The notes under the pieces were generated by a model. The model saw only the letters and a list, made by a program, of their open reading frames with translations, was not told the DNA's origin and did not search any database. DNA of 64,000 bases from Octopus sinensis (taxonomy: Eukaryota), in assembly GCF_006345805.1 (NCBI RefSeq), contig NC_043008.1:36208001-36272000 (forward strand), in the 5' to 3' direction. A program made the position numbers and the translations under genes. Within the stretch, counting starts at the first letter, position 1, and each line of letters starts with the position of its first letter. Shown one piece after another: positions 1,761 through 50,700 of this stretch.

Positions 1761-1791
<31 letters not shown>

Positions 1792-1809
1792 TGTGTGGTG
1801 TGTGTGTGT

Positions 1810-2395
1810 GGAGGTGTAATGGCCCAGTGGTTAGAGCAGCGGCGTCGCAGTTGTAGGATCGCGGTTTCAATCCCAGACCGGGCGTTGTGAGTGTTTATTG
1901 AGCGAAAACACCTAAAGCTTCACGAGGCTCCGGCAGGGAGTGGTGGTGATTCCTGCTGTACTTTTTTGCCACAACTTTCTCTCACTCTTTCTTCTGTTGG
2001 CCTGCTCGCTTAGCCAGCAGGGTGGCGTCATTTGAAGGCTAAAACAATATACAATGTATGCATATATGTGTGTGTGTGTGTGCGCATGTGTGTGGAGGTG
2101 CAATGGCCCAGTGGTTAGGGCAGTGGACTCGCAGTTGTAGGATCGCGGTTTCAATTCCCAGACCGGGCGTTGTGAGTGTTTATTGAGCGAAAACACCCTA
2201 AAGCTCCACGAGGCTCCAGCAGGGGGTGGTGGTGATCCCTGCTGTACTCTTTCACCACAACTTTCTCTCACTCTTTCTTCTGTTGGCCTGCTCACTTAGC
2301 CAGCAGGGTGGCATCATTTGAAGGCTAAAACAATGTGAAGCGCATTGTGACCAGTGATGTGTAGCAACATCTGATAGCCTGGTCGGTCACGGTGA
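1810..2395 (+). mobile_element. Two head-to-tail copies of a tRNA-derived SINE (1810-2048 truncated; 2094-2395 full)
   Basis: A-box TGGCCCAGTGG and B-box GGTTTCAAT(C/T)CC, with a shared body. A third copy lies at 17881-18180 on the - strand. Confidence 0.85.
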
Positions 2396-10389: not shown

Positions 10390-12400
10390 GATGTACAAAG
10401 CCTGACTTTCCATTCTAAGAGATCCTGTTCCATTATATGCAATGACAGTGATGTCCACTTTCTAGCTGAGGACTTCAATGATCATGTTGGGAAACATTAG
10501 TATTTGACCCACGGAATCACATAAAAGCACATGGAGGTCATTGCTGTGGCTTAGGATGTGAAGAAGGGGTTCTTGGATTGTTTATGATAGAAATTTAAGA
10601 AAATCAGACAGCTGGTTACCTGCTATTCCAGATGTGATGAGGGCAAGAGGAATTTTATTCTTGACCATAAAAAGAGTCTGGTCAATGATTATAAACATTA
10701 AGTCATTAGCAAAAATTTATAATAGGCATAGGAGTGGCTGTGGTAAGTTGCTTGCTTACAAAGCACATGGTTCCAAGTTCAGTCCCACTGCATGGCACCT
10801 TGGGCAAGTGTCCTCTACTATAGCCTTGAGCCTTGTGAGTGGATTTGGTAGATGGAAACTGAAAGAAGCCCATCGTATATATGTATATGTATGTTTGTGT
10901 GTATATGTTTGTATATCTGTCTTTGTCCTCCCAACATAGCTTGACAACCGATGCTGGTATGTTTAGCTCCTCGTAGCTTAGTGGTTCAGCAAAAGAGACC
11001 GATAGAATAAGTACTAGGCTTACAAAGAATAAATTATTCTGGGGTTGATTTTCTTGACTAAAGGTGGTGCTCCAGCATGGCCACAGTCAAATGACTGAAA
11101 CAAGTAAAAGAGTAAAAGAGAAAAGAGAGTAAATTAATGAGAATCAAGTTGAAAATAAGAAAGTTGAAAAACAAATAAGGAATAAAAGAGAAGTTGAAAT
11201 ATTCCTATGTGAGGTAAAGTTTTTATTCAGTATTGAGATACTTATATATATAGAGAAATTAGGAAGTTAAAAGTACAAGACAGAAACATAGGTGGATGCT
11301 TATAATGAATCATATACTCTGAATACTTTTGAATAATTCTGTAGTTGGAGCACTGTCAATCAATGCATGACAAGTAATGCTTTAGGCCACAAAGGCTAAA
11401 TGACAGACCTGACAGGCACAAAAAAAAAAAGGTTTTAGCTGGGTAAAATGTTAAGAAGTTAGATGGGGTAAAAGATGATAGATTTATGTTATCAGGTAAG
11501 AGGCTGTGAGTTAAATGTAAGCTAATGTTCTGTGTTGGAAGCGTGACAAGAATGTTGCATTCTTAATTGCAGTTCATTTTGTTTAGATTTATCAGGATGT
11601 CTTTGAGGGAAAAGTGTAACCAAAACAAAACTTTCCCTCAATAACAGGGGAAAGAAAGAGGTACGGATGTGTCACAATGAAACGATGTTTAATGAGAAAT
11701 ATGAAAGTGATAGCGAACAATTAATATGAGCAGTGCCAATGTAAGAGACACCTTGAGAGATTGCAAAGTATGAAGTAAACGGTGTCAGGAAAACAATTTG
11801 CAAGTCTATCAGGGATAGCTGTGAAGATACTAAGAATATATTAAAGGTATGCTTGTTACTTAGTTAATCAGATTATGCGAGAATGTGTTAGTCATCATGA
11901 CTGGTGTAGCAAAATCAATCTAAATTGCCAAGATAGACAAAGTACAGAGGCTGAAAGCTGCTGGAACGTGTAATGAAATTAGTTGGAAGCATTATAGGGA
12001 AGTTAATACAAAATAGAATTTATTTGATTAAGATACCATTTTGGTTTGTACCAATATGCTATATTTCTTATGTACTAATGGCAAAGAAGTTCTTGGTTAA
12101 GAATATACCACTCTATTTTGCATTTTACGACCTAAAGAAAGCCTTTGACTGGATTGCATATTCTGTAGTGTGAAAGGTGCTGGGAAAATTTTGGGATAAA
12201 CGAACGACTCCTGAGGGCAATTGAAGTTATGTACAAATGGTATACAAGCAACCCAATGGCTAACAGGGATTTCAATGATGACTGGGCCATACAGGGAAGT
12301 ATCCATTATTTTCCTGTTCTCAGCCCACTTTTATCTAATCTATGTCTTCAGACAGTAATGGTAGGTAGGCCCATTACTGGTTGTCCTTTATAATTTTATA
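10390..12400 (+). mobile_element. Highly degenerate RTE-clade LINE (APE and RT remnants) interrupted by a SINE
   Basis: DVHFLAEDFNDHVGK resembles the APE GDFNGHVG motif; FGFVP...KKFLVKNIPLYFAFYDLKKAFD resembles the RT FVDLEKAFD motif; many stops. Confidence 0.7.
10725..11125 (+). mobile_element. Abundant tRNA-derived SINE with CORE-like CCTTGGGCAAGTG motif and 3' ...CTGAAACAAGTAAAAGAG tail
   Basis: Full copies here, at 25915-26350 (+) and at about 15150-15640 (-). Many partial copies (about 5400, 5915, 9660, 13480, 19575, 20140, 20980, 25148, 26780, 31320, 33460, 39410, 59890, 60290, 61120, 61505). Confidence 0.85.
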
Positions 12401-16310: not shown

Positions 16311-17850
16311 TTTAATTGTAGAGAAAGAGAAATCAAAGACGTTGGTAACTATATAATTATGAATGCTTCACAAGGAACCACTGTGGCACTTGTTGCCGTT
16401 TCCTATATACTTGTCTTATATTTATTATCTTTTGTTTATGTCTAAAATGTGGTCACAAAGTCAGGGACTTATAGTTTCTTTCTCTGCGCTGTAGAAATTA
16501 TTTTATTTATATTTACATATTTCTAACTGTGAGCATATAGCGCGATATCAGGGTAAAATTATACTCATTCAAATGGAAAATAATCTAAGGTTATAGTTTA
16601 TTAATAAAAAAAAATTATTCATGAATGACGAATTTCGAAAAATCTATTGCTTTTTAAATATTTTGTCGCATATTAATAAATCTGAAGATGATTGTCTCCT
16701 ATTCTTCCATTCCTGGGCGTTCAGTTTGTTCACTGTAATATTTTTCAAGTGGGTGGTATTTAATGATCATAGTACGAAATAACTTTATCGAAAGCAGTTG
16801 GGTGTTTACATGACGATAGTTACATTCTGAGGTTAAATCCTTAAAGAATCGATAGAAACAGGCCCCGGTTGTTGCGGTTGTTTACCCTAGGTCAGTCCTG
16901 AAGGAGCCAACAGACCAGCCTGTGATGATCGATGGTGTTCAGGCATATGACCATCACATCTTTTTTGTATATTCAGAAGTACATTGACATATATATGCTT
17001 CTGTTTTAAGACTGTAAGGAGTGGGCTATTAGGTTGCTGTTGTTTAACCCCAGGTCTGATCTGATTGAGCAAGACCTATGAGCAACGGGGTTTCGCCTAG
17101 ACGAATCCGACTCTCTTGGATATTGCGTGTATATGACTCCATCATCCAATGCGTTTTTCCATTCTCAAGACAGTAGATGTAATTCGAGAGAGATTTGGAA
17201 TACTTTTACCATCAGATCAAACAACGGCCTTGGAACTCTTCAACTTGCGGTACCTATTGAATACTGTGGTATGAACAATCGCTTGCACCCTTCTCTGGAA
17301 TTGAAGGGTTTTTGTGTCAAAGAAAGAAAGAAGTTGTTACTGTTGAAACAAATAAAATGTGTAAACCTACGTAGTTTTATACTCTTACATTCTGAGTTCA
17401 AATCCTCTTAAAATCGACCTCACCTTTCAATCCTTTGGAGTCAGCAAAATGAGTACCCGTCATTTAGTAGCCTACACACTCCCTCATCTCTTCAATATGT
17501 GACCTACTAACCCTGTAAGGGAAAATATAAGTAGGTTGTTCACTTCATTTGAAATAACAACCAAATTTTTCTCAGGTCCTTACATCTTAAAAAAACCAAA
17601 AGACACTCAGGATAACGTAGACATAGATAGAGACACTATGTTTGAATAAAAGACAAGTTGGTCACATCAAGAATGCCTTTAATCATAGATGTACTTGATG
17701 AGGGCTGAGCTATATTGATATGCTAAAATGGAGTGAATGCTATAAGTACTAAGTTGGCACCCCCCCCCCCAAAAAAAACTGGCAAAACATTTATTTGTAT
17801 GTGCATCCATATAACTATATATTGGTCCACGTAGTGAAATGAACATACCT

Positions 17851-24200: not shown

Positions 24201-24568
24201 AACCCAATTTTTCTCTTTTTTTGTTTAAAAAAGAACTTTCACCTAATTAAATACACTCTCCCTTACTTAAATTATTTTGTCAGCATTTTCTTCATTTCCT
24301 TTTTTTATATATCACAACTCGTGTTCCACATCTCCTTTTTTAAATATATATATATATATATATATATGAGTTCAGCAACAATTTAGATTCAAATGAATAT
24401 GGTACTTAATTTAGATGCACCAGAATTTTGTATGGTGTTACCCATAAAAATATGCGGGGTGATTATAATAAAAAAATAAGCAACAAGAATGAATCCGGTA
24501 ATTTATAAAATGTTGTAGTATGAAACAATTGTACTAAATTACCGGATTCATTCTTGTTGCTTATTTTT

Positions 24569-24607
<39 letters not shown>

Positions 24608-25085
24608 TATTTAAAAGCAGCAGAAATATAACAATATTTTTGACCTGGTTATGTAAACATCTATTGTTATATTTCTGCTGCTTTTAAATAACGCATATTA
24701 CTCTACCTCTGGTATTTGAGTACTCTTTTTTTCCACCTTGTTTCACATTTATGTACTTACTCCAGTGTATATATATATATGTACACACCTCCATACATGC
24801 ATATATGAATGCATACCAGCATGGCTGAGTGAGCAGTGTATCGGGCTGTGAGATTGCTAGTTTTAATATATTGTCACTTGTGCATTACATAACCTCTGTA
24901 GTTAAAAAATTTAAGTCTTAATTAGTCCAGTCCACATAGCTATGTGGACTGGACTAGGTATCACTGGTTAGAAACAACTCACTCCTTTCAACATTGGCAC
25001 TCACAAATACTAATGTTATTAGTATTATTAATGCAATTCTATAAAGCAGAATAGTGTGTCTCATCTGAAGTCCAATACTATAATG

Positions 25086-25122
<37 letters not shown>

Positions 25123-25850
25123 CAATAATAATAATGATAATTTAGGTGTAGGGGTGGCTGTATGGTAAGTAGCTTGCTTACGAATCACATGGTTCTGGGT
25201 TCAGTCCCACTGCGTGGCACCTTGGGCAGGTGTCTTCTACTATAGCCTCGGGCCGACCAAAACCTTGTGAGTGGATTTGGTAGACGGAAACTGAAAGAAG
25301 CCCATCGTATATATCTATATATATATATTATATATATATATATATATATAATATATATATATATATACACATTATTTAAAAGCAGCAGAAATATAACAAT
25401 ATTTTTGACCTGGTTATGTAAACATCTATTGTTATATTTCTGCTGCTTTTAAATAACGCATATTACTCTACCTCTGGTATTTGAGTACTCTTTTTTTCCA
25501 CCTTGTTTCACATTTATGTACTTACTCCAGTGTATATATATATATGTACACACCTCCATACATGCATATATGAATGCATACCAGCATGGCTGAGTGAGCA
25601 GTGTATCGGGCTGTGAGATTGCTAGTTTTAATATATTGTCACTTGTGCATTACATAACCTCTGTAGTTAAAAAATTTAAGTCTTAATTAGTCCAGTCCAC
25701 ATAGCTATGTGGACTGGACTAGGTATCACTGGTTAGAAACAACTCACTCCTTTCAACATTGGCACTCACAAATACTAATGTTATTAGTATTATTAATGCA
25801 ATTCTATAAAGCAGAATAGTGTGTCTCATCTGAAGTCCAATACTATAATG

Positions 25851-25884
<34 letters not shown>

Positions 25885-26075
25885 CAATAATAATAATGAT
25901 AATTTAGGTGTAGGGGTGGCTGTATGGTAAGTAGCTTGCTTACGAATCACATGGTTCTGGGTTCAGTCCCACTGCGTGGCACCTTGGGCAGGTGTCTTCT
26001 ACTATAGCCTCGGGCCGACCAAAACCTTGTGAGTGGATTTGGTAGACGGAAACTGAAAGAAGCCCATCGTATATA

Positions 26076-26132
<57 letters not shown>

Positions 26133-26920
26133 ATATGTTTGTGTGTCTGTGTTTGTCCCCACAACATCACTTGACAACCGATGCTGGTGTGTTTACGTCC
26201 CTGTAACTAAGCGGTTCGGCAAAAGAGTCTGATAGAATAAGTACTAGGCTTACAAAGCCTAACTCTAAGTCTTGGGGTCGATTTGCTCGACTAAAGGCGG
26301 TGCTCCAGCATGGTCACAGTCAAACGACTGAAACAAGTAAAAGAGTAAAGAGTAAAGGGTATAACAATCCTTCAAGGCACAAGGCTTGAAAATTGGGGCA
26401 GGGGGATAGTCAGTTACATCAACTTCAGCTGGTACTTATTATATCGACCCTGAAAGGTTGAAAGGCCAAAGTTCATGAAGAATTTAGCAAAGATTTTACC
26501 GGTTTACAAAATTATTGTCAGAGATGTTGATTAAAGCTTGTTTACATGTCTTTATGATCCCCAGATTTTAGTTTACTCATGTTTTCTTTTTTTTTAAATT
26601 TTAAATTCAATTTTTGTTTCTGTCTTAGATTTTATACGAAGATAATGTGGATGAAAAAGAGAAAATACAGTTGCTAACTTTACTTCAAGAATATGGAGGA
26701 CTTGGATTGGAATTATCCAGGTAAAACGTTTTTTTTTAGCTTAGAAAATTTTAGAATTATTCTTTTGTATATCAGTATTTAATCATTTGCTTCCCAGTCA
26801 CAGGGTTTCCAGTTCGGTCCCATTGTGTGGCACTTTGGACAAGTGTCTTCTACTACAGCTCCATGCTGACCAAAGCCTTTTGTGTGGATTTGGTAGACGG
26901 AAACTGAAAGAAGCCAATCA

Positions 26921-34098: not shown

Positions 34099-36322
34099 GT
34101 AGTAGTAGTAGTAGTAGTAGTTGTTATTATTAAGGTGTCAAGTTGGCAGAATTGTTAGAACAGTAGAAAAAAAAAAATGCTAGGCAATATTCATTTTGGC
34201 TCTTTTCGTTTTGAGTTTAAATCTCACCAAAGATAACTTTGTCTTTCATTCTCTAGAAAGAAATGTCACCATCATCATCATCATCATCATCATTATTGTT
34301 ATCATTATTATTATTTTATACCCTTTGCTTTGTTTCAGACAAAATGTGTTCGAATCAAAGGAAACTAAACATTCAAGACACTCAACTGATGAGGTTGATT
34401 ATCCTTTCATTATTTCTTTTCTTAATTATTTTAATCAATTGCCTTTGTGTTGTCTTTTTTAAATTACTCTTTGGTGTGATGTTTATTGTTTAATATTTAA
34501 AATTTTGTTCTTGTTTAGAACCAGTTCTGATAAACCTCCGACACATTTTATCATTGAACGACTTTCAATGGAGTTTTTCAACTTGATTTTTCCCTTAACA
34601 TTGTTCTTAAATAAAACATATTCAAAATAAGAGCAAATTGTGCTGGAGTGGAGGCCTTAATCTGCTAATTGTGGTAGCCAAATTTCTCTTAAAATTGTGT
34701 GACAACAAGGGCTGAAGAGGCAGCAGGGTATTTTTACATGATTGTTTGAGCTGTAGTTCTAACAGCCAAATCTATCTTAATTAAAATGTATCTAAAATGA
34801 GCAAACTGATCCACATGATGTACTTAATCTTTTAACATTTAAAACATCTTTATCCAACCCAAGTATTTTACTTGTTTTATGTTCAAACTGACCATGTCCA
34901 GCCTTTCACATCTACCCTTCAATGTCATTCTAAAAATAAGAACCAGTCCAGTTCAGTCCAGTCCAGTCTAGTAGATTGGTGGAATCATTTGAGTGCTGGA
35001 CAATATGCCTTGCTGTGTTTGTTCCTGTTCTTTATCTTCTGATTTCTTGGGTGGTAGACTTAAATCTGGTGCCCTGTCTAACAACATCACTTAGTTCTTA
35101 GGTGTCTTAAACCAACTTCATTAAGTTGCTTGGTCTGTTTTGAAGGTAACTTCCTGCCATCTATAATAATAATAATAATAATAAAAGATAGTGCTCATGT
35201 GAACTGCTCATATCCTACGCAAAATACTTTCTATGTAATCTCAAGTTTTAAAACAAACATAATTTCCGTATGATTTTTTAGTCATTCACTAGTACAACAC
35301 TAAGTACAAAACCAAATATATGGCACCCTAGGCATAATACCAGCACAAACTTCCAACTTGTTGTCTCTTGAGGTCTCTGGGTGAGACTTGGAGCCAGCTT
35401 GTGCAAATGTAAAGCAAAAGTCAAACATAGAATAATAATAATAATAATAATAAAAATAATAATAATAATCGTTATAAATTTGAGTGGTGTTTCTCTGTCC
35501 ATAACGTTTTTATGTTCATTAACTCCTTCTAGACCGTTGGTGTAAGGACAACGAAACTCAAACCAGCAACTCCCTTAATCTCAGGGAATGTCCTAAGAGG
35601 GTCTATTTTTTAAGGGCTGCTTAATTGGGGCCCCACTGACTCCCCCCTATTTTTACTGCATTTTAAACTGAATACATGGCATTGCAGACCAAATTGGAGC
35701 AATGACAATGTATTTCATACAATGAACTTCCAGGGAGTATTGTAAGGAGGTTCAATTTCTAAAGGGCCACTTAAATGGGACCCCACTGACACTGCTATTT
35801 TTTCTGTATTTACCTCACTCCTATGCTTATTGATTAAACTATGATCAATATCACTACTTAGCACATTTGCAGAAACTAGAAACTAGCTGCGTGTTTATCA
35901 GCAAAGCTGGCAGAAAGTGGTCCAAGTATTGATACACTGATACGCTGTTACAGAGATGGAATTTACGTTACATGTTGAATGAATAACAAGTTAATGGGAC
36001 ATTGGGTTTAGGTATGAGTGCGAGTGAAGTATAAGTATTGAGTGTATGGGTATGGTGTGTGGATATATGTCAGGTAGGGAGTGTGGAATGGGGTATCGGA
36101 TAATTAATACCAGGAGATACATATACAATGAATGTGACTGAATCCATTACATTACACATGGGCAAAGGGCCACCAAGCAGCCCGATAGTGGGGCCGAAGG
36201 TCTCAAAAGTGCCCTCTGTAGGAGCCAACCTGATGCTGCCTGAAGAGCAGCTTCAAGGTTAGTAATAATAAAACAAAAAGACCAAAGTAATTTTGAAGTA
36301 CCTTCCTCTTTTTCTATAAAAA

Positions 36323-36405
<83 letters not shown>

Positions 36406-39400
36406 TGAGAAGAAGAAGAAGAAGAAGAAAAAGACCAATGCAGTTTAATTTATTTGAAATGAGCATCACATGAGTTAGCTTGTTTGTTACATTTCTATTG
36501 AAATACATTGCTTTTGTTTCAATTAATTTTGAAAATAATGAAGAATTAGGTAAAATAATTTCTACATTAATTAAGCTGCTGGTGTTTGGAACTTAAATTA
36601 ATTAGAAATTTTGGTACATCTGACCTCATTTATAACTGATTCATTCATCACTGATCCAGGGTAACATAGTACACCAGTTGTGATTTGTGTTATGCTTATG
36701 AGTGAAGGAGTGTGGCTTAGGGGTTAGGGATGTTTGGCTCATAATCGTAAGGTCATGAGTTCAATACCTGGCAGTGTATTGTGACCTTGAGCAAGACCCT
36801 TTATTTCATGTTGCTCCAGTCCACTCTGCTAACAAAAACGAGTTGTATCTGTCATTCAAAAGGGCCTAACCTTGTCACATTCCGTTTCATGCCGAATCTT
36901 CCGGAGAACTACGTTAAGAGTATGCATGTCTATGGGGTGATCAGCCACTTGCACATTTGATTTTATGAGTGGGCTGTTCCATTAATTGGATCAACTGGAA
37001 CAGTCATTGTCATAACCAATGGAATGCCAGCTATGCTTATCATGGGTTGGCAATCAGTCAAAGATTCTGCTTGGACTGCAAAAGCACACCTCAATGACCA
37101 TCCACACTGCTTCGTACAACTTGAGATCTTGGCATAAAACCTATTTTTCCTGCATGTGCTATTATGCATCTATCACTGATTCATTTAACATGGTTCAGTT
37201 TTTGGAACCAAACACCCTTGATAAATGAAGATAGATATATCTTAATTCAGATCACTTCAGAATAGGAACTGTTTCTTGGAGATTTAGGAGTGGTCTCAGT
37301 TGTGCTGCTGTTGAAAGATGTCAACCCTTTTGTTACTGTATTTATTTTGAGATGTTCTTTGTTTCTTTCAATTACTTTAAATGTAACAAAGAATTTAGTA
37401 AAATAACTTAGTTATCATTAAGCTTGTGTTAGGAGCATAAATTGTGTTTAAGGTTTGGTGGAAGATTTTAATTCAAAACTTATGAAAACAAGACATTTGT
37501 ACTCAGAGCTAGAGCTGGTTTCAGCCAGGTTGGTAACGAAAGGGTTAAATAGTAAATTTCTTGTTGCTTGAATTGCTCAGTGGAATCTCTTGTAAGTAAC
37601 CCCCAGAAATATTTCATCCTTTTCTAACCATAGTTTTCAATGTAACTCACCTAGTGTTTTGATAAATTCTGAAAATAATCAAAAATTTTGAGGGGTTTAG
37701 TAAAATAACTAATTTTTTTGTAATTTAAATGATGTTTAGAATCAAACTTAAGAAAAGCTTTTTATTTTATATCATAAAACATATACATTTTATTAAATAC
37801 CCTTTAATAGAGACTGTTTTGTACAATAAAATCAGTGGTATTTCTGGGTAGGTTGATATCAGAAGGGTTAAAATGTGTACTCCCCATTAGATAAACAGGA
37901 AATTTTTATGTAGTTACCAAATTTTCTTCATAGAGCTCTGTTTTGTATTTAAAATGGTAACAACATAAGGCAAAGGGAGAGCCTCTACATTTTCACTTCA
38001 CCAGCTCTCCTTCTCTCTCTGCCTGTCTGTCTCTCTTGCTCTCCCTCCACCTCTTTTTCTCACTCATGCAAATGTTAAATATCTTAACCCAGACATTGCT
38101 ATAACACAAGAGACAATATTTAAAAGACCCGCTTTCCAGTTTGGTTGTACTTTGGCACCCCTTGTCATCTCAGTAAACTGTAATGTTTAGGATTTTATTG
38201 ACTCTACTTAAATGTCTGTTTAATCCACTTTAATTACAAGAATCCCTTTGTTGCAAAAGTGTTGCATTTCTGAAAATCTTTCTGTAACATGTAGCTTCAT
38301 AACATGAAACCTATTTATCTCTGACCTCCTTGTAACATGGATGTCAAAGGGAGAAGAAAAAAAAATGTTTCATATTATGCACCGTCGTGTTTTAGAGAGA
38401 TTTTCATGAATGCAATATTTCTGTAATTTGTGAAAATACATGTAGTTAAATCAAAGAATTATTTGGAACAGTGAATCTTGAAGCATATGAAACTATAAAT
38501 AATGACCTGTAAATATTGGATTGAAAAACCATTTTGGATGGAAAGCCTTTGACTTTTTCTACCCCAAAAGTTTTTTCAACTCAATATATACATGCTGTTA
38601 TTCATAGTTTCATGTGCTTCAAGATTCTCTATTCCAAAAAAGAATTATTTCTAATTCTTTTGAAAGTTTATTAATTCTTAAGAGCTCAAATTATATTCTA
38701 CTTTATTGTATTCATAACACTTTTCTGGCATTAAAACATATTTTCTTTTCTTTCATATTTCAATGCAGCCTCCAAGTCCTGATGAACAATCGTTGTTGAA
38801 CATGGAGGTGAAGCAGTTTGTGTCTCTAGTCATGGATAACTACATCCCTTTCACCCCAGCATGTTTGTGGACATTAATAGACACCATTGTAACTATTGTG
38901 AAGTCTGACTGGGAAACTCCGCCCTCTGTAAGTTCACTCCTCCCTTTACACTGGTGGGGTTTGGGGTAGAGCTCATTATTTTCTCTCCATTTTATTGTTT
39001 ATTTATCAATCCATTACCATTCTTAGTGAACCATTATACTTTAATTTATTAACTCCAGAGATGTGTTATTTATTTAGATATGCTAATTATTCATATATAA
39101 TATTATACTTCTACTCAGTGATCCTCTCAGCTCTTCTATACTGAGGAGGTCTAATAAACACAAAACATACACCATACTTGCCAAATAGATTGAAATATTA
39201 GTTAATCAGTTTATGTTGTCTTTTCTTCACCAAATAAGTATTTCTTATTAATAATTAATTATGATAGAAGCAGTATTAATACCAGAAGACAACCTTTATC
39301 TTCCACTTAACACGGATGTTGTGTTTGAACACTGAATATTGCATTATTTATCTTGAGAGGATTTTTCATAAGGATTTGTGGTTCTGCTCATTGCATTAAA

Positions 39401-42400: not shown

Positions 42401-45400
42401 ACAGAGAGAGAATGAAGAAAAACTTGTAGATTTAGTTGTCAAACATGGTGAATATATGTAAATATATAGATAGTAATAACAATCAATAGATTTACTGTTT
42501 CCTTTTGTATTTATTTATTTTTTGCTGGAATAGACAAATCTCTATTTACCGATTTAAAAATATAAACAAAAAAAAAACTGATGGCCAAATGAATTAGGTA
42601 TTTGAATACTGGTTTATGGATCATAAGTTCAAATCTGATGCAGATATTTCAATGTTTTTTTTTGTTCTAGTTAGAATGCTATTTTACACTGCTTTAGTCC
42701 ACTTGTGCTGTTGGAAATAAGAACCTCAGGTTCATCTTGGAATGATGGAATGATTGTGTAAGAATAATGGAATGATCATGTAGGAATGACAGAATAATAA
42801 CAGGATTTTTTAGGAATGATGAAATGAGTATTCAAGAATGCTGGCGTGACTGTCTAGGAATGCTAGAGTTATTGTCTAGGAATGATGTAATAATTATCTG
42901 GGAATCACCAGATCATTTCAGAATGATGGACTGATAATCTAGAGATGATGAAACAGTCCAGGAACGATGGAATGACAGAATAAGCATTTAGGAACCACCA
43001 GATCATCTTTGAGTAATGGAATAATCATTCAGGAAACACCAAATCATCCAATGATAATGGAATGATCATCTAGGAATCACCAAACCTTGGAATAGAAGTG
43101 GTTTTTCTACCTTGGAATGATTTATTTTTCATCCTTTTAATATGGGAGAAGCAGCATCTCTTATAAGAACTCAAACTCAGAAAACATTTAGATTTACATT
43201 TCATTACATTAAATTCAGAAAATCCTGCTACAAACAATCATTGATCAACATTGATCAACCCCTGACTCACATCCATTGCTATTGTTATGGTTTATTCCAT
43301 TTTCCCAATTATGAAGTTAATGTATTACCTTTGCTAAGGCTTACCAAATACATCTGCTACTCTCCTTATTGCTGTCCTGGTATCATATTTCACAGGGTTC
43401 TGAATGAACCTACTCCAAACAGCCTGCTACCCTCAGGTCTGCTCTCTTGGCCTGCATTTTCCCTACAAAACATAAGCTACAGGAGTTCAAACTGAACATC
43501 ATTTGCAGCAACCTAACCAGTCAGGGTAGGCTTTCAAGTCTTATGGGTGCTGCCCTCCTTCTCAGGTTAATCTAAGAACTTCTAGAGAAACAAAATATTT
43601 TTTATAATACCAATTTGAAACAGTAGTAATTACTTGTATATTTTTAATATTTAATCAGCAGTCTCTCCCCCTCCTGCTCCTGCTCCTGCTCCTCCTGCTC
43701 CTCCTGCTCCTCCTGCTCCTCCTCCTCATCATCATCATCACCATGATGATGATGATGATGATGGCAGATCAAATTATGCCAAGGTTGACTTTGCCTTTTA
43801 TCCTTTTCGGGGGTCAATAAAATAAGTACCGGTTGAGCACTGGAAGGGAGTGGGAGGAGGAGCGATGTAATCAACTGCCCCACCCCCACCCATCCACCCA
43901 CTCAAATTTCAGGCCTTGTGCCTTTTGTAGAAAGAAATTAAATTATCTCTATACAATTCAAAAGGCAGATCAATAGTTTCTTTTCTTCTTATCACAAAAG
44001 ACCAAAGTAGATTTCGTTGGATGTACGTATAAATATTACACCATAATAATTACTCTCAGAAAATGCTCCAATTACATTGATTGAAGTTGTGTTATCTTCC
44101 AGTTCATTCATTCAAATTTTGTTTTCTATACTTGCTATTTCCTGGTTCATTCATATATTATTATTATTTTTTTCTTCCATGCTTGTATGAATGAGTTGCA
44201 CTATCTTTTTGTTAAAGCAATATGTGTTTTTGTAGCCGTATGTTTTCCCTACAACTAACCATTCAACCATGACATTGAGAGTGAAACCTGTTTAACACTT
44301 GTCAGGCAAACCAGATCAGAGTTAAATGCTTTTCTCAATGGACACGACACAATGCCTGTAGTAAGACTTGAACCATATGACCGTGTAAGACTGGTGCAAG
44401 CATGGCTGCATGAGTACAGCTTTAACTGTATGGGTGCTGGGATGGGTGTATGGGTGCAAGAATGGGTGTATGGGTGCAAGCATGGGTGTATGAGTGCTGG
44501 CATGGGTGTATGGGTGCAAGCATGGCTGCATGAGTACATCTTTAACTGTGTGGGTGCAGGCATGGGTGTATGGGTGCAAGCATGGGTGTATGGGTGCAGG
44601 CATGGGTGTATGGGTTCAAGCATGGGTGTATGGATGCAAGCATGGGTGTATGGGTGCAAGCATGGGTGTATGGGTGCTGGGATGGGTGTATGGGTGCAGG
44701 GAAGGGGGTATGGGTGCTGGGATGGGTGTATGGGTGCAAGCATGGGTGTATGGGTCTATGGGTGCAGGCATGGGTGTATGGGTACAGGCATGGGTGTATG
44801 GGTGCAAGCATGGGTGTATGGGTGCAGGCATGGGTGTATAGGTGCAAGCATGGGTGTATGGGTGCAGGCATGGGTGTATGGGTGCAAGCATGGGTGTATG
44901 GGTGCAAGCATGGGTGTATGGGTGCAAGCACGGGTGTATGGGTGCAAGCAAGGAGGTATGGGCGCAAGCATGGGGGTATAGGTGCAAGCATGGGTGCATG
45001 GGTGCAGGCATGGGGGTATGGGGGGAAGGCATGGGTGTACGGGTGCAGGCATGGGTGTATGAGTGCAAGCATGGGTGTATGGATGCAAGCATGGGGTATG
45101 GGTGCAAACATGGGGATATGGGTGCAGGCATGGGTGTATGGGTGCAGGCAGGGGGTATGGGGGTATAGGGGCAGGCACGGGTGTATGGGTACAGGCATGG
45201 GTGTATGAGTGCAAGTATGGGTGTATGGATGCAAGCATGGGGGTATGGATGCAAGCATGGGTGTATGGGTGCAGGCATGGGGTTATGGGGGCAGGCATGG
45301 GTGTATTGGTGCAAGCAAGGGTGTATGGGTGCAGGCATGGGTGTATGGGTGCAAGCATGGGTGTATGGGTGCAGGCATGGGTGTATGGGTGCAAGCAACG

Positions 45401-46140
45401 GTGTATGGGTGTATGGGTGCAGGCATGGGTGTATGGGTGCAAGCATGGGTGTATGAATGCAGGCATAGGTGTATGGGTGCAGGCATGGGTGTATGGGTGC
45501 TAGCATGGGTGTATGCGTGCAGACATGGGTGTATGGATGCAAGCATGCATGTATGGTCACAGAGTTAGCTTTACAGCCATGTGACTTCAGGTTCGACCAT
45601 GTTGCAGGAGGCACAATGAATCCATTTGTGTTACAAACATTGTCTAAAGAAAAAAAAAATGTTCCCTGATGACAAAGACACCTTTAATCAGATATTCACA
45701 TTCAAATCTGTCAGAACATTCTGAGAGTAAACAAATACATCATCATAATTTGAGGGTAGATTTAACTACTATTATTTTGGTTTTTACAAATCATTGAAAT
45801 AGACTTTCTTTAGATTGTAGCCTAGGCTGTTGTGCATGTGTAACTGCGAAATTCAATCAGCACAATTGAATTTGGTTAAATAGATTTTGGGTAAATGTCA
45901 CTTAAACCATTTCTCTTTCCAGATGGAATTTCCCCGCCAAATCTTGTTGAATTCAGAAGAGGTTCTTCTTCATAAACGTTTTGTTATGGCATCCTTGCAT
46001 CCTGCTCATAGTGTATTACATCGGCATCTGATGTTATCATGCTTGGCTGATTATATTGAATATAACGAGGTATGTTCCCTATATATATGTCTTCAGGTTG
46101 TCTATTTAATGAGTGCGCGCGCACACACACACACACACAC

Positions 46141-47793: not shown

Positions 47794-50700
47794 TCTGCTT
47801 CCCAGTCTCTCTATCACACTCTGACCTTTCATCATCTGACACAAGATCCCCTCTCAAAATTCCTTATCTTGCAAATTACTTGGTGACCCTGCTGGTACTG
47901 GTGCCATGTAATAAGCATCGAGTCTACACTGTAAAATGGTTCTCATTTGGCAGGGCATCCAGCTGTAAAAGCCATGCCAAAACTGACCTCACCTGTGCTA
48001 CTGCCTCGTAAAAAGTGTTCAGTTTACTTTGCAGAGTGGTTGGTGTTAGGAAGGGCATCCAGCTGTAAAAATCCTGCCAAAACTGAGACAACAGCCTGGG
48101 GTAGTCTTCTACCTGACTGGCTCCCATCAACCATCTTGCCCATGCATTCATGGAAGAAGGACGTTAAACAATGAGGATGATGATGATGATGATGATGATA
48201 TATATATAAAAGATAAAACAGAGTTCATGAAGACTGGTGGTGACCTGTGTCAACAAAAAGTAATGTTTGTTAGAAAAATCAACAGAAAAATAAAAAGGTA
48301 GAAAAGGTTGTTGTTTCAAACAGAGTCCATCTTTTGAGTTGATATGACAGAGGGGAAAAGGAAAGAATAGAATAGTTATATATCCTCTGAATTAGAATAG
48401 TTAGCTGCAACTGATATTGAACACAGAGCCATGCATGCATAGCAAGGAAGTAGTAAAAGAGGAGAAAGTTGGTGAGAGACAGAAGGAGAGAGAGAGAGAG
48501 AACTGTACTAGAAATTGGTCAGTACTCATTTTTAGTTTAGTAGATGAAGCAAAGTGAAATGATATACCTTGATCAATGAAACAACACATTGCCTGGCCAG
48601 GAATCAAACCCACAACCTTATAATCATCAGTTCAACACTCTAACCACTTAATCAAATGTAACAAAACTTACAGGTTTCTCCAGAATTTTTATTTCAATCA
48701 TGCAACAACGGACCTTGTTATTTATTTTTTTTTGTTTTTTATGATTACAGAGAGAACAATGCAAATATTCTGTGATGAATTCAGTTCCTGTCATAGCTTC
48801 AAAACAGATCGCAGACCTCAATCCAACAGCTTTTGATGATATTTCAATTCAACTAAAAAAAGTGCTTATACTTAATAAATGTCTTCCTCCTGCTTTAGAT
48901 TCTGGTAAGAAAACATATTTATTATTTATAATTTTAACTATATAAGTATATTAAGAGAAGAGTGGCACATAAAAAACACCATTTGGCAAATAAAAAGAAC
49001 CCACTATACTCTTAGAGTGGTTGGCGTTAGGAAGAGCATCCAGCTATAGAAACCTTACCAGATCAGATTGGAGCCTGGTGCAGCCTCCCAGCTTGCCAGT
49101 ACTCAGTCATAACGTCCAACCCATGCCAGCATAGGAAGCGGACATTAAATGATGATAATAATGCTGGTATTATATATACTTGTAAGTATATATAACATAT
49201 ATACTTACAAGTATATAGTGTTTTTGTTATGTATTTGTCTGAATATTTTTTTATCATACCTAATGCGCCTACTATGATAGGAATTGTTTCTGTTTTTAGG
49301 CTTCACATTCGAGTTCTCTCTATTTCCAGATCTTTGTATTTTGAAAATTTCTCCGATTCTTTTAGAGAAATATTGTCATCTTTTGGTATTGATACATTGA
49401 TCAGAAAAGCATTGTTTTCTTGCTGATCTCAGAACTATATCCAGCATATTGACCTTAATTTCTCTGTGTATTGGCATATCACAGAGTATGGTTGCTTTCT
49501 CATTTTCTGTGACCTTTTCTGGCGTGTGCCTATACCATCTTTTTCTATTGTTATTCCATAGAGTTGGCATAGCTTCTAGTGTATTATTATGATTGTTATT
49601 ATCATTACTTCCAGACAACAGCTTCCTACTGAACAACCTCCAGTCAATGAAAAAGTTAGCCCAATCCACAGATGATCCCCATGCTTGCGCCTACTATGAT
49701 AGGAATTGTTTCTGTTTTTAGATTCCACATTCGAGTTATCTCTATTTCCAGATCTTTGTATTTTGAATGTTTCTCTGTTTCTTTCAGAGAAACATTGTCA
49801 TCTGTTGGTATTGATACATTGATCAGAAAAGCATTGTTTTCTTGCTGGTCTCTGACAACTATATCTGGCCTATTAGCCTTAATTTCTCTATCTGTGTGTA
49901 TTGGCATATCCCAGAGTATGGTTACTTTCTCATTTTCTGTGACCTTTTCTGGCATGTGCCTATACCATCTTTTTCTATTGTTATTCCATAGAGTTGGCAT
50001 AGCTTCCAGTGTATTATTATTATTGTTATTATTACTTCCAGACAACAGCTTCCTACTGAACAACCTCCAGTCAATGAAAAAGTTAGCCCAATCCACAGAT
50101 GATCCCCATGCTGCTGTATCCTTGTACTGTGCCCTATTTCACTTTTACTGTCGACATCATACCTCTAAACTTGGAACTAATATTCAAAAGTAAGCCAGTT
50201 CTTTCCCAAATCACAACAGTCCACTGCAATAGAATCACTGGTGTATTCTGTTTAGTTTCACTACTGTGAAGCAGACAGAATGTGTGTGTGTATGTGTACA
50301 TGGATGTTTGTGTGTGTGGGTGTGCATGCATGTGTGTATGTGGACGCATGCGTGTATTTGTGTGTGCATGCATGTGTGTGTGCATGCATGTGTGTGTGCA
50401 TGCATGTGTGTATGTGTGTGTATGCATGCATGTATGTGTGGGTGCATGCCTATGTGTGTGCACGCATGCATGTGTGTGTGGGTGCATGTACGTGTGTGCG
50501 CATACATGCATGCATATGTGTGCAGGTGTGAATGCATGTGTGTGTGGGTGTGTGTGTGTATTGTGTGCGGGTGTGCATGCATGTGTATGTGCGGGGGTGT
50601 AGTATGTGTGTGGGTGTGTGTGTAGTGTGTGTATGTGTACATGTGTAAAAGCATGGTTCTTGGCACAGGCATGATTAAAAAGTTCAATTTGCAACCATGT

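What the first reader, a model, noticed from the sequence alone, without database searches (positions are those of the whole stretch)
49264..50112. Duplicated splice acceptor plus partial exon, identical only in the exonic part
Seen: copy A reproduces the acceptor (ttacttccag|, 49614/49615) and 71 nt of the exon 427 nt upstream of the real one. The LINE-derived part differs by about 23 substitutions and 3 indels over ~350 nt, decreasing toward the exon, whereas the last ~80 nt are identical. Use of the upstream acceptor reads ...DDPHACAYYDRNCFCF* (TAG 49719-49721), with no donor nearby. Inference: a decoy or poison acceptor kept identical by gene conversion or selection, or two divergent haplotypes concatenated by the assembler.
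Basis: partly seen in the sequence, partly recalled or inferred. Interest (0 to 1): 0.7.

Follow-up and report, generated by a model that had tools for sequence, protein, structure and literature searches.

The report
Tandem duplication making a spare splice acceptor
A 425-base stretch covering the end of an intron and the first 71 bases of an exon of the octopus AP5B1 gene is present twice in a row in the Octopus sinensis assembly but once in two related octopuses, which leaves a spare splice acceptor in the intron and looks like an ordinary structural variant, not a maintained regulatory device.

Summary
Unit A (49264-49685) and unit B (49686-50112) are head-to-tail copies. They differ by 23 substitutions and 3 indels.

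The window is the Octopus sinensis assembly GCA_006345805.1, and the gene is AP-5 complex subunit beta-1. The annotated 899-aa proteins use the downstream acceptor (50042). O. vulgaris and O. bimaculoides each have a single copy with both flanks intact.

Copy A differs from copy B by 6.6%. That is more than the sinensis-vulgaris divergence (4.0-4.2%), equal to the bimaculoides distance (6.7-6.8%), and about five times octopus heterozygosity. The duplication is therefore not recent, and a join of two haplotypes is unlikely, though it cannot be excluded without reads.

The exon piece is invariant in all four sequences. Only changes on the A lineage could break the identity, and about 2-3 are expected (P of none about 0.05-0.12). 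Neither conversion nor selection is needed to explain it.

Using acceptor A gives a TAG at 49719. No transcript evidence is available.

One 5-substitution plus indel cluster, shared by copy A and O. bimaculoides, remains unexplained.

The parts
49264..49685 (+). Unit A of the tandem duplication (422 nt): antisense retroelement tail, then pseudo-acceptor, then 71 nt of exon-derived sequence
49686..50112 (+). Unit B (427 nt): the same segment, ending in the first 71 nt of the exon that the annotation uses
   Evidence: tblastn of XP_029643618.1
49680..49691 (+). Duplication junction CATGCT|TGCGCC (49685/49686), blunt, no microhomology, no N
49604..49685 (+). 82-nt tail of A identical to 50031-50112: 11 nt of intron (attacttccag) with the pseudo-acceptor at 49614/49615, plus 71 exon-derived nt
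49264..49299 (+). 36-nt head of A identical to 49686-49721 (intronic, retroelement-derived); also invariant in O. vulgaris and O. bimaculoides
49719..49721 (+). TAG reached in frame if acceptor A is used (...DDPHACAYYDRNCFCF*)
50042..50187 (+). AP5B1 exon encoding aa 390-438, with the annotated acceptor at 50041/50042 and donor at 50187/50188
48751..48904 (+). Upstream AP5B1 exon (aa 339-389), with the donor that must choose between acceptors A and B
45923..46069 (+). Preceding AP5B1 exon (aa 290-338)
49686..50014 (-). Retroelement ORF tail in copy B, open throughout (part of minus-strand ORF 49656-50096); 82-85% identical in DNA to five element copies from other samples
49219..49587 (-). The same retroelement tail in copy A, with a 6-nt deletion, a 2-nt frameshift and a W-to-stop change. 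It continues left of the duplication (IIVGA|LGMIKKYSDKYITKT), so the left breakpoint lies inside the element
49442..49466 (+). Cluster of 5 substitutions plus a TATC deletion where copy A matches O. bimaculoides, while copy B (49866-49895) matches O. vulgaris and the element consensus
48984..49160 (.). SINE copy in the same intron (eight other copies in the window), left of the duplication
49173..49217 (.). Perfect 21-nt inverted repeat; a 0.75-1.06 kb block present in the other two species is missing just to its left (49166-49170)

Best explanation
This is a genuine head-to-tail tandem duplication of about 425 nt in the Octopus sinensis lineage. It spans the last ~350 nt of an AP5B1 intron, which is an antisense, 5'-truncated retroelement tail already present before the three species split, plus the acceptor and the first 71 nt of the next exon.

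The event happened once, by a blunt end-joining or replication-type mechanism. It is not recent. The copies are about as diverged as O. sinensis is from O. vulgaris, or somewhat more.

The upstream copy is a decaying pseudo-acceptor inside the intron. It has no donor of its own, so under exon definition the spliceosome should pair the downstream acceptor (50042) with the donor at 50187, as the annotated proteins do. Any use of acceptor A gives a 573-nt exon with a stop at 49719, and nonsense-mediated decay should remove that transcript.

The exon-derived part is still identical for two reasons. Copy B's exon is under coding constraint: it is invariant across three species. Copy A's 82 nt were expected to collect only two or three changes.

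Shown: the structure, the gene identity, single copies in two other species, the divergence figures and the stop codon. Inferred: that the duplication is real in the animal, the mechanism of origin, and the choice of acceptor and NMD.
For: Structure: searches show abutting units in the same orientation. There are 23 substitutions with a transition/transversion ratio near 2 and only 3 indels. That looks like evolved divergence, not long-read error.

Gene: the spliced exons match 100% to the 899-aa AP-5 beta-1 of O. vulgaris and O. sinensis, with Pfam AP5B1_middle at 1e-52 and AP5B1_C at 9e-19. The window is 100% identical to GCA_006345805.1.

Other species: O. vulgaris (ONT-based assembly, no N in 70 kb) and O. 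bimaculoides each have one unit with both flanks contiguous.

Distances over the intron part: A-B 6.6%, B-vulgaris 4.2%, A-vulgaris 5.5%, and all distances to bimaculoides 6.7-6.8%. The locus-wide baseline is 4.0% for sinensis-vulgaris and 6.8% for sinensis-bimaculoides.

Branch-specific changes are A 9, B 6, vulgaris 4, bimaculoides 10, and the A versus B rate difference is not significant.

The exon 71 nt are identical in all four sequences. The expected number of A-lineage events in 82 nt is 2.1-3.1, giving P(0) of 0.05-0.12.

The stop codon and the lack of a donor or poly(A) signal come. At least four downstream exons lie in the window. No truncated isoform appears among the proteins clustered with the annotated one.
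Against: No reads could be examined, so the junction is supported by one assembly only, and that assembly is an unphased PacBio CLR build.

A second small tandem duplication in the window (24.56-26.12 kb) is also single-copy in O. vulgaris. This could mean either real turnover or a tendency of this assembly to duplicate.

The A-B distance exceeds the sinensis-vulgaris distance although O. vulgaris lacks the duplication. This needs an extra assumption: loss in vulgaris, origin near the split with lineage sorting, or capture of two old alleles.

The 5-substitution plus indel cluster shared by copy A and O. bimaculoides does not fit a simple post-speciation duplication.

A-only substitutions are rich in transversions (3:6 against 15:5 on the other branches, p = 0.048).
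Confidence: 0.62

Rival explanations
1. Assembly artefact (false duplication). The animal has one unit per chromosome, and the assembler or a gap-closer placed two versions of it (two haplotypes, or one poorly corrected contig end) one after the other.
For: The duplication is seen only in GCA_006345805.1, a non-phased PacBio CLR assembly with 20,491 contigs (PMC10700109). Two other species have a single copy. The junction is blunt, as expected from two abutted contig ends. Another tandem duplication in the window is likewise absent from O. vulgaris, and its copies differ by 1.25%, close to heterozygosity. A-only substitutions have an odd transition/transversion spectrum. False duplications are common in such assemblies (PMC9516828).
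Against: There is no gap between the copies and no N anywhere in the window, whereas gaps between copies are a stated hallmark of false duplications (PMC9516828). The copies differ by 6.6%. That is about five times the 1.22% heterozygosity reported for O. vulgaris, with P about 1e-7 for 19 or more differences at that rate, and it exceeds the 4.0% divergence between species. Alleles would have to be older than the species. The differences are mostly substitutions with few indels, unlike uncorrected CLR error. A 427-nt unit is far shorter than a long read, so reads span it.
Confidence: 0.25
2. Functional decoy or poison acceptor. The upstream acceptor is used in a regulated way to send part of the AP5B1 transcripts to NMD, and selection or repeated gene conversion keeps its acceptor and exon part identical to the real one.
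For: The acceptors are identical over -11 to +71 and have equal pyrimidine content (12/17) in -20 to -4. The upstream one is transcribed first. Its use gives a stop well upstream of later junctions. Zero differences in 82 nt is nominally low (P = 0.003 under the crudest model; 0.05-0.12 with outgroups). A-B differences thin out toward the exon.
Against: The duplication is absent from O. vulgaris and O. bimaculoides, so it is not a conserved device. No site in the last 270 nt shows a derived state shared by A and B that would mark conversion; the only AB|VM site is 49414. Three A-only events (49577, 49591 and an ATC insertion at 49601-49603) lie within 40 nt of the acceptor, so any conversion tract would have to cover exactly the 82 nt. 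The identical 36-nt head is intronic and identical in all species, which shows that such runs occur without any exon function. The statistic is not robust to clustering of events. No isoform ending ...CAYYDRNCFCF is among the clustered proteins.
Confidence: 0.07
3. Old duplication with independent losses, or capture of two old alleles. Either the duplication predates the split from O. bimaculoides (or at least from O. vulgaris) and the other lineages went back to one chimeric copy by unequal recombination, or it arose by unequal crossing-over between two long-diverged alleles, so the copies were already different at birth.
For: The A-B distance (6.6%) equals the distance to O. bimaculoides (6.7-6.8%) and exceeds B-vulgaris (4.2%). 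Five substitutions and a TATC deletion are shared by A and bimaculoides, against B, vulgaris and the element consensus. Only one site groups A with B. The three leftmost A/B differences have vulgaris matching A, as expected from an A-left/B-right recombinant.
Against: All the support for grouping A with bimaculoides sits in one tract of 48 nt or less, which could be a single complex mutation or a short ectopic conversion. Without it, A, B and vulgaris are roughly equidistant (15, 14-15 and 18 differences). Two sites group A with vulgaris and B with bimaculoides. The model needs two independent losses, or a polymorphism surviving between two speciation events. No changes are seen on the branch leading to B plus vulgaris, which a clock would predict (about 4-5 expected).
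Confidence: 0.2

Closest known systems
Tandem exon duplication (the route to mutually exclusive or repeated exons)
   Same: A local head-to-tail duplication that copies an acceptor with its intron end and exon sequence inside a gene.
   Different: Only the first 71 of 146 exon nt are copied, and no donor. The copy cannot act as an alternative exon; it can only extend the exon upstream through 356 nt of intron and a stop codon.
Poison exons and alternative splice sites coupled to nonsense-mediated decay
   Same: Use of the extra site introduces an in-frame stop far upstream of later exon junctions.
   Different: Known regulatory poison cassettes are conserved across species and have transcript support. 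This one is absent from two related species, has no donor of its own and has no transcript evidence.
Heterotype false duplications in unphased assemblies (Ko et al. 2022, PMC9516828)
   Same: Adjacent similar copies in a CLR-based haploid assembly, not seen in a sister species' assembly.
   Different: There is no gap between the copies. The divergence is five-fold above heterozygosity and above the between-species level. The unit is much shorter than a read.
Antisense retroelement sequence next to splice acceptors (exonisation-prone intronic repeats)
   Same: The intron end is an antisense retroelement fragment ending about 27 nt from the acceptor, with an (ATT)n-type pyrimidine-rich tract between them.
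   Different: The element does not supply the acceptor of a new exon. The acceptor belongs to a conserved AP5B1 exon and was merely copied along with the element.

Membership tests
Tandem segmental duplication | Two copies in the same orientation that abut directly | tested here: met
   Units 49264-49685 and 49686-50112, 92% identical, one blunt junction
Tandem segmental duplication | Single copy with both flanks intact at the orthologous site of related species | tested here: met
   O. vulgaris L010 ~36053-36478 and O. bimaculoides L009 ~16512-16938, each running ...CCTAA|TGCGCC...CCATGCT|GCTGTA...
Tandem segmental duplication | Individual reads spanning flank-A-junction-B-flank | not testable with these tools
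   No read data. ORFs spanning the junction are not on record, and the junction 26-mer is absent from metagenome contigs
Poison exon / NMD-coupled alternative acceptor | Use gives a premature stop more than 50 nt upstream of a later exon junction | tested here: met
   TAG at 49719-49721; downstream exons at 52.3, 57.3, 60.1 and 61.8 kb and beyond
Poison exon / NMD-coupled alternative acceptor | Transcripts that use the site | not testable with these tools
   No RNA data. The annotated proteins of O. sinensis and O. vulgaris use 50042, and no truncated isoform is in their cluster
Poison exon / NMD-coupled alternative acceptor | Conservation of the element across species | tested here: not met
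   Absent from O. vulgaris and O. bimaculoides
Gene-conversion tract between paralogous copies | Run of identity longer than the local divergence predicts | tested here: inconclusive
   P = 0.003 to 0.12 depending on the model; 0.09-0.49 for a run of that length anywhere
Gene-conversion tract between paralogous copies | Derived states shared by both copies, against outgroups, inside the tract | tested here: not met
   The only AB|VM site is 49414, 190 nt away; the tract itself is invariant in all four sequences
False (heterotype) assembly duplication | Assembly gap between the copies | tested here: not met
   No N in the 64-kb window; criterion from PMC9516828
False (heterotype) assembly duplication | Copies differ at about the level of heterozygosity | tested here: not met
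   6.6% against 1.22% (O. vulgaris figure), P about 1e-7; also above the 4.0% sinensis-vulgaris divergence
False (heterotype) assembly duplication | Half read depth and single-copy k-mers over each copy | not testable with these tools
   No reads available
AP-5 complex subunit beta-1 (host gene) | AP5B1 domains and collinear match to annotated orthologues | tested here: met
   AP5B1_middle 1.1e-52, AP5B1_C 8.8e-19; 100% over aa 290-438; 15 exon matches covering aa 1-604 in the window
Non-LTR retrotransposon (LINE) origin of the intronic part | Member of a repeated ORF family | tested here: met
   495 homologues, the closest 84-86% identical, also in corals and a tunicate; five DNA copies 82-85% identical
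Non-LTR retrotransposon (LINE) origin of the intronic part | Linked reverse-transcriptase or endonuclease domain | tested here: inconclusive
   Only a zf-RVT match below threshold in one homologue (E = 8e-4, 20.4 bits against a cutoff of 27.5). No Pfam domain on the fragment itself

The most novel reading that the evidence does not exclude
The duplication is real and older than the sinensis-vulgaris split. Copy A preserves an ancient haplotype still seen in O. bimaculoides, and its intact acceptor plus exon start is kept because regulated use of the upstream site tunes AP5B1 output through NMD in O. sinensis. This would be a young, lineage-specific poison acceptor born from a partial-exon duplication.
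Probability: 0.04. Interest if true: 0.5.

Novelty: new member of a known kind. Interest (0 to 1): 0.2.

Why it matters
If real, this is a clean natural case of a duplicated 3' splice site with an identical core. It could show which of two equal acceptors an octopus spliceosome prefers, and how much NMD load a gene tolerates. For annotation it is a hazard: the collection's gene table breaks the O. sinensis AP5B1 gene exactly here. If it is an artefact, it is one more flag on small tandem duplications in this widely used reference assembly. Either way it does not change what is known about AP-5 or about splicing regulation.

Tried and rejected
1. A word-indexed protein search with the 101-aa two-exon peptide found nothing, although identical annotated proteins exist. 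The exhaustive HMMER search found them.

2. Pfam on the retroelement ORF gave nothing, and only a sub-threshold zf-RVT match appeared on one homologue. I therefore call it a retroelement tail and do not assign it to a named LINE clade.

3. I first polarised the A/B differences with five non-orthologous element copies. That suggested copy A was three to five times more derived than B (15:5). The orthologous single copies of O. vulgaris and O. bimaculoides corrected this to 9:6, which is not significant. The first result came partly from copy B sitting closer to the element consensus at sites where the orthologues agree with A.

4. I looked for a local direct or inverted template that could have produced the 5-substitution cluster by template switching. 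None was found in the window or in 110 kb of other octopus sequence.

5. I looked for independent sightings of the junction. Exact look-ups of the two ORFs that span it and a scan of metagenome contigs for the junction 26-mer found nothing. This is uninformative, because those collections hold little octopus DNA.

6. I considered an alternative terminal exon reached through acceptor A and rejected it as unsupported: there is no AATAAA or ATTAAA between 49200 and 50400 on the + strand.

7. I considered two independent insertions of related elements and rejected it. The units share the exon piece, the same truncation point and 44 differences from the other element copies.
Full report
**What is there**

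The region is eukaryotic, with introns, SINEs and microsatellites. A pairwise alignment and a column-by-column count show two units that abut head to tail. Unit A is 49264-49685 (422 nt) and unit B is 49686-50112 (427 nt). The junction CATGCT|TGCGCC is blunt, and the window contains no N.

The units differ by 23 substitutions (15 transitions, 8 transversions) and three indels of 2, 6 and 3 nt. All differences lie between 49300 and 49603 in A coordinates. The last 82 nt of each unit (attacttccag plus 71 exon nt) are identical. No other copy of the unit exists in the window.

**The gene**

Weak but collinear Pfam hits first pointed to AP5B1. An exhaustive HMMER search with the three spliced exons (45923-46069, 48751-48904, 50042-50187) then found an 899-aa protein that is 100% identical over residues 290-438.

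Its cluster holds AP-5 complex subunit beta-1 of Octopus vulgaris (CAI9731007.1), O. sinensis (XP_029643618.1) and O. bimaculoides. The O. sinensis protein has AP5B1_middle at 1e-52 and AP5B1_C at 9e-19.

tblastn places residues 1-604 on 15 exon segments between 16025 and 61962 on the + strand. Residues 390-438 fall on 50041-50187. A second, partial match of residues 390-415 falls on copy A. The annotated models therefore use the downstream acceptor.

AP-5 is the fifth adaptor complex, of late endosomes (PMC3191125).

**The intronic part**

On the minus strand, copy B carries an open reading frame through the whole unit (ORF 49656-50096). Its middle part belongs to a very large family of short ORFs: 495 hits, the closest 84-86% identical, with others in corals and a tunicate.

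Copy A carries the same sequence with a 6-nt deletion, a 2-nt frameshift and a W-to-stop change. The reading frame continues to the left of 49264 (IIVGA|LGMIKKYSDKYITKT). The left breakpoint of the duplication therefore lies inside the element.

Homology to other element copies ends about 27 nt upstream of the acceptor. The only hint of the element's class is a zf-RVT match below threshold in one homologue. "Retroelement tail, probably non-LTR" is as far as the evidence goes.

**Consequence of using acceptor A**

Joining 48904 to 49615 reads ...DDPHACAYYDRNCFCF* with TAG at 49719-49721. The only donor-like site before 50042 is a weak AGA|GTATGG at 49916, and there is no poly(A) hexamer.

The two acceptors are identical from -11 to +71 and have the same pyrimidine count in -20 to -4. 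Many exon junctions lie downstream. By the established 50-nt rule such a transcript would be an NMD substrate; this is inference.

**Related species: the decisive evidence**

The collection returned three loci:
- The O. sinensis locus is 100% identical to the window, so the window is GCA_006345805.1, CM016870.1.
- The O. vulgaris locus is L010, 70 kb with no N, from an ONT-based assembly.
- The O. bimaculoides locus is L009.

In both other species, units A and B map to the same single place. A four-way alignment shows one unit with both flanks contiguous. The retroelement insertion is shared by all three species. The duplication is found only in the O. sinensis assembly.

**How old is the duplication?**

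Substitution distances over the intron part:

| Pair | Distance |
|---|---|
| A-B | 23/348 = 6.6% |
| A-vulgaris | 5.5% |
| B-vulgaris | 4.2% |
| A, B or vulgaris to bimaculoides | 6.7-6.8% |

The locus-wide baseline from collinear BLAST blocks is 4.0% for sinensis-vulgaris (37 kb) and 6.8% for sinensis-bimaculoides (16 kb).

Branch-specific changes are A 9, B 6, vulgaris 4 and bimaculoides 10. Only one site groups A with B, two group A with vulgaris, and five group A with bimaculoides. The A versus B rate difference is not significant.

So the copies are at least as diverged as the two sister species. If the five clustered sites are counted as one event, A, B and vulgaris are roughly equidistant. 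That places the duplication near the sinensis-vulgaris split.

**Is the exon identity more than chance?**

The 71 exon nt are identical in all four sequences. Copy B, the real exon, contributes no change, and only the A lineage could break the identity. From the A-only events in the 348 intronic nt, 2.1-3.1 events are expected in 82 nt, which gives P(0) of 0.05-0.12.

The cruder test without outgroups gives 0.003 if the differences are independent and 0.03 if they are clustered. For a run of that length anywhere in the unit it gives 0.09-0.49.

No derived state shared by both copies marks a conversion tract. Three A-only events lie within 40 nt upstream of the identical stretch. The 36-nt identical head is plain intron and is also invariant in all species.

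The fall in A-B differences toward the exon is real. It is not mirrored on the vulgaris and bimaculoides branches, which have 7 of their 14 changes in the 85 nt next to the acceptor. The gradient hints that some homogenisation may have occurred, but it is not a demonstration.

**Artefact or real?**

Published hallmarks of false duplications are half read depth, gaps between the copies, discordant linked reads and one-copy k-mers (PMC9516828). Only the gap criterion can be tested here, and it is not met.

A haplotype join would need alleles that differ by 6.6%. That compares with 1.22% heterozygosity reported for O. vulgaris and 4.0% between species. P is about 1e-7 at the heterozygosity rate. 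The differences are mainly substitutions, unlike CLR error.

Some points favour an artefact:
- The duplication is seen in one unphased CLR assembly only.
- A second small tandem duplication in the window (24562-25362 / 25326-26122, 98.75% identical) is also single-copy in O. vulgaris.
- A-only substitutions are rich in transversions (p = 0.048).

I put a real duplication at about 0.6-0.7 and an artefact at about 0.25.

**What remains unexplained**

Between 49442 and 49466, copy A shares five substitutions and a TATC deletion with O. bimaculoides. Copy B and O. vulgaris carry the state found in all five outgroup element copies. The tract is at most 48 nt long, and no local template exists for it.

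Three explanations remain, and the data at hand cannot separate them:
- an old duplication with later copy loss;
- capture of two old alleles by unequal crossing-over;
- parallel short ectopic conversions.

**Verdict**

The finding is best read as a lineage-specific partial-exon tandem duplication that left a pseudo-acceptor in an AP5B1 intron. There is no evidence that the pseudo-acceptor is maintained or used. This is an ordinary kind of structural change, and it is of modest interest.

Noticed in passing
window 24562-26122: A second tandem duplication: unit about 764 nt, copies 98.75% identical, bounded by (TA)n runs and containing a SINE-like repeat. Both copies map to one place in O. vulgaris (L010 9623-10398).
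   Followed up: partly
window 1785-2334: A third local tandem pair (1785-2048 / 2068-2334, 92.5% identical). It lies outside the fetched orthologous loci, so it could not be compared.
   Followed up: no
window 49166-49170; L010 34899-35959; L009 15682-16445: O. vulgaris and O. bimaculoides share a 0.75-1.06 kb block here, an interspersed repeat with copies at window 10719-11126 and 25889-26351. It is missing in O. sinensis, about 95 nt left of the duplication. The sinensis haplotype therefore has two structural changes close together.
   Followed up: partly
L006 34647 / 35018 (= window 49671 / 50042): The collection's gene table cuts O. sinensis AP5B1 into pieces exactly here. One piece ends inside copy A's exon-derived part and the next starts at the real acceptor. 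The O. vulgaris gene is one piece. This probably shows that the duplicate confuses protein-to-genome mapping.
   Followed up: no
whole window against L010 and L009: Substitution divergence is 4.0% (sinensis-vulgaris) and 6.8% (sinensis-bimaculoides), a ratio of 1.7. The published split times are 2.5 and 34 million years (PMC10700109). Either only the slowest-evolving intron parts still align with O. bimaculoides, or the dates and rates do not fit each other.
   Followed up: no
window 44390-45556: A long GC-richer minisatellite (about 120-nt period family, 80-85% between repeats). It gives long spurious ORFs on both strands.
   Followed up: no
window 49173-49217: A perfect 21-nt inverted repeat (TATATACTTGTAAGTATATAT / 3 nt / its complement). 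It is present in O. vulgaris too but not in O. bimaculoides.
   Followed up: partly
window 49300-49591 (A-only substitutions): The nine substitutions private to copy A are 3 transitions and 6 transversions, against 15:5 on the other three branches (Fisher p = 0.048).
   Followed up: partly
tool behaviour: The word-indexed protein search returned no candidate for a 101-aa query that is 100% identical to proteins present in the collection. Negative results from that tool on short eukaryotic queries are not informative.
   Followed up: yes
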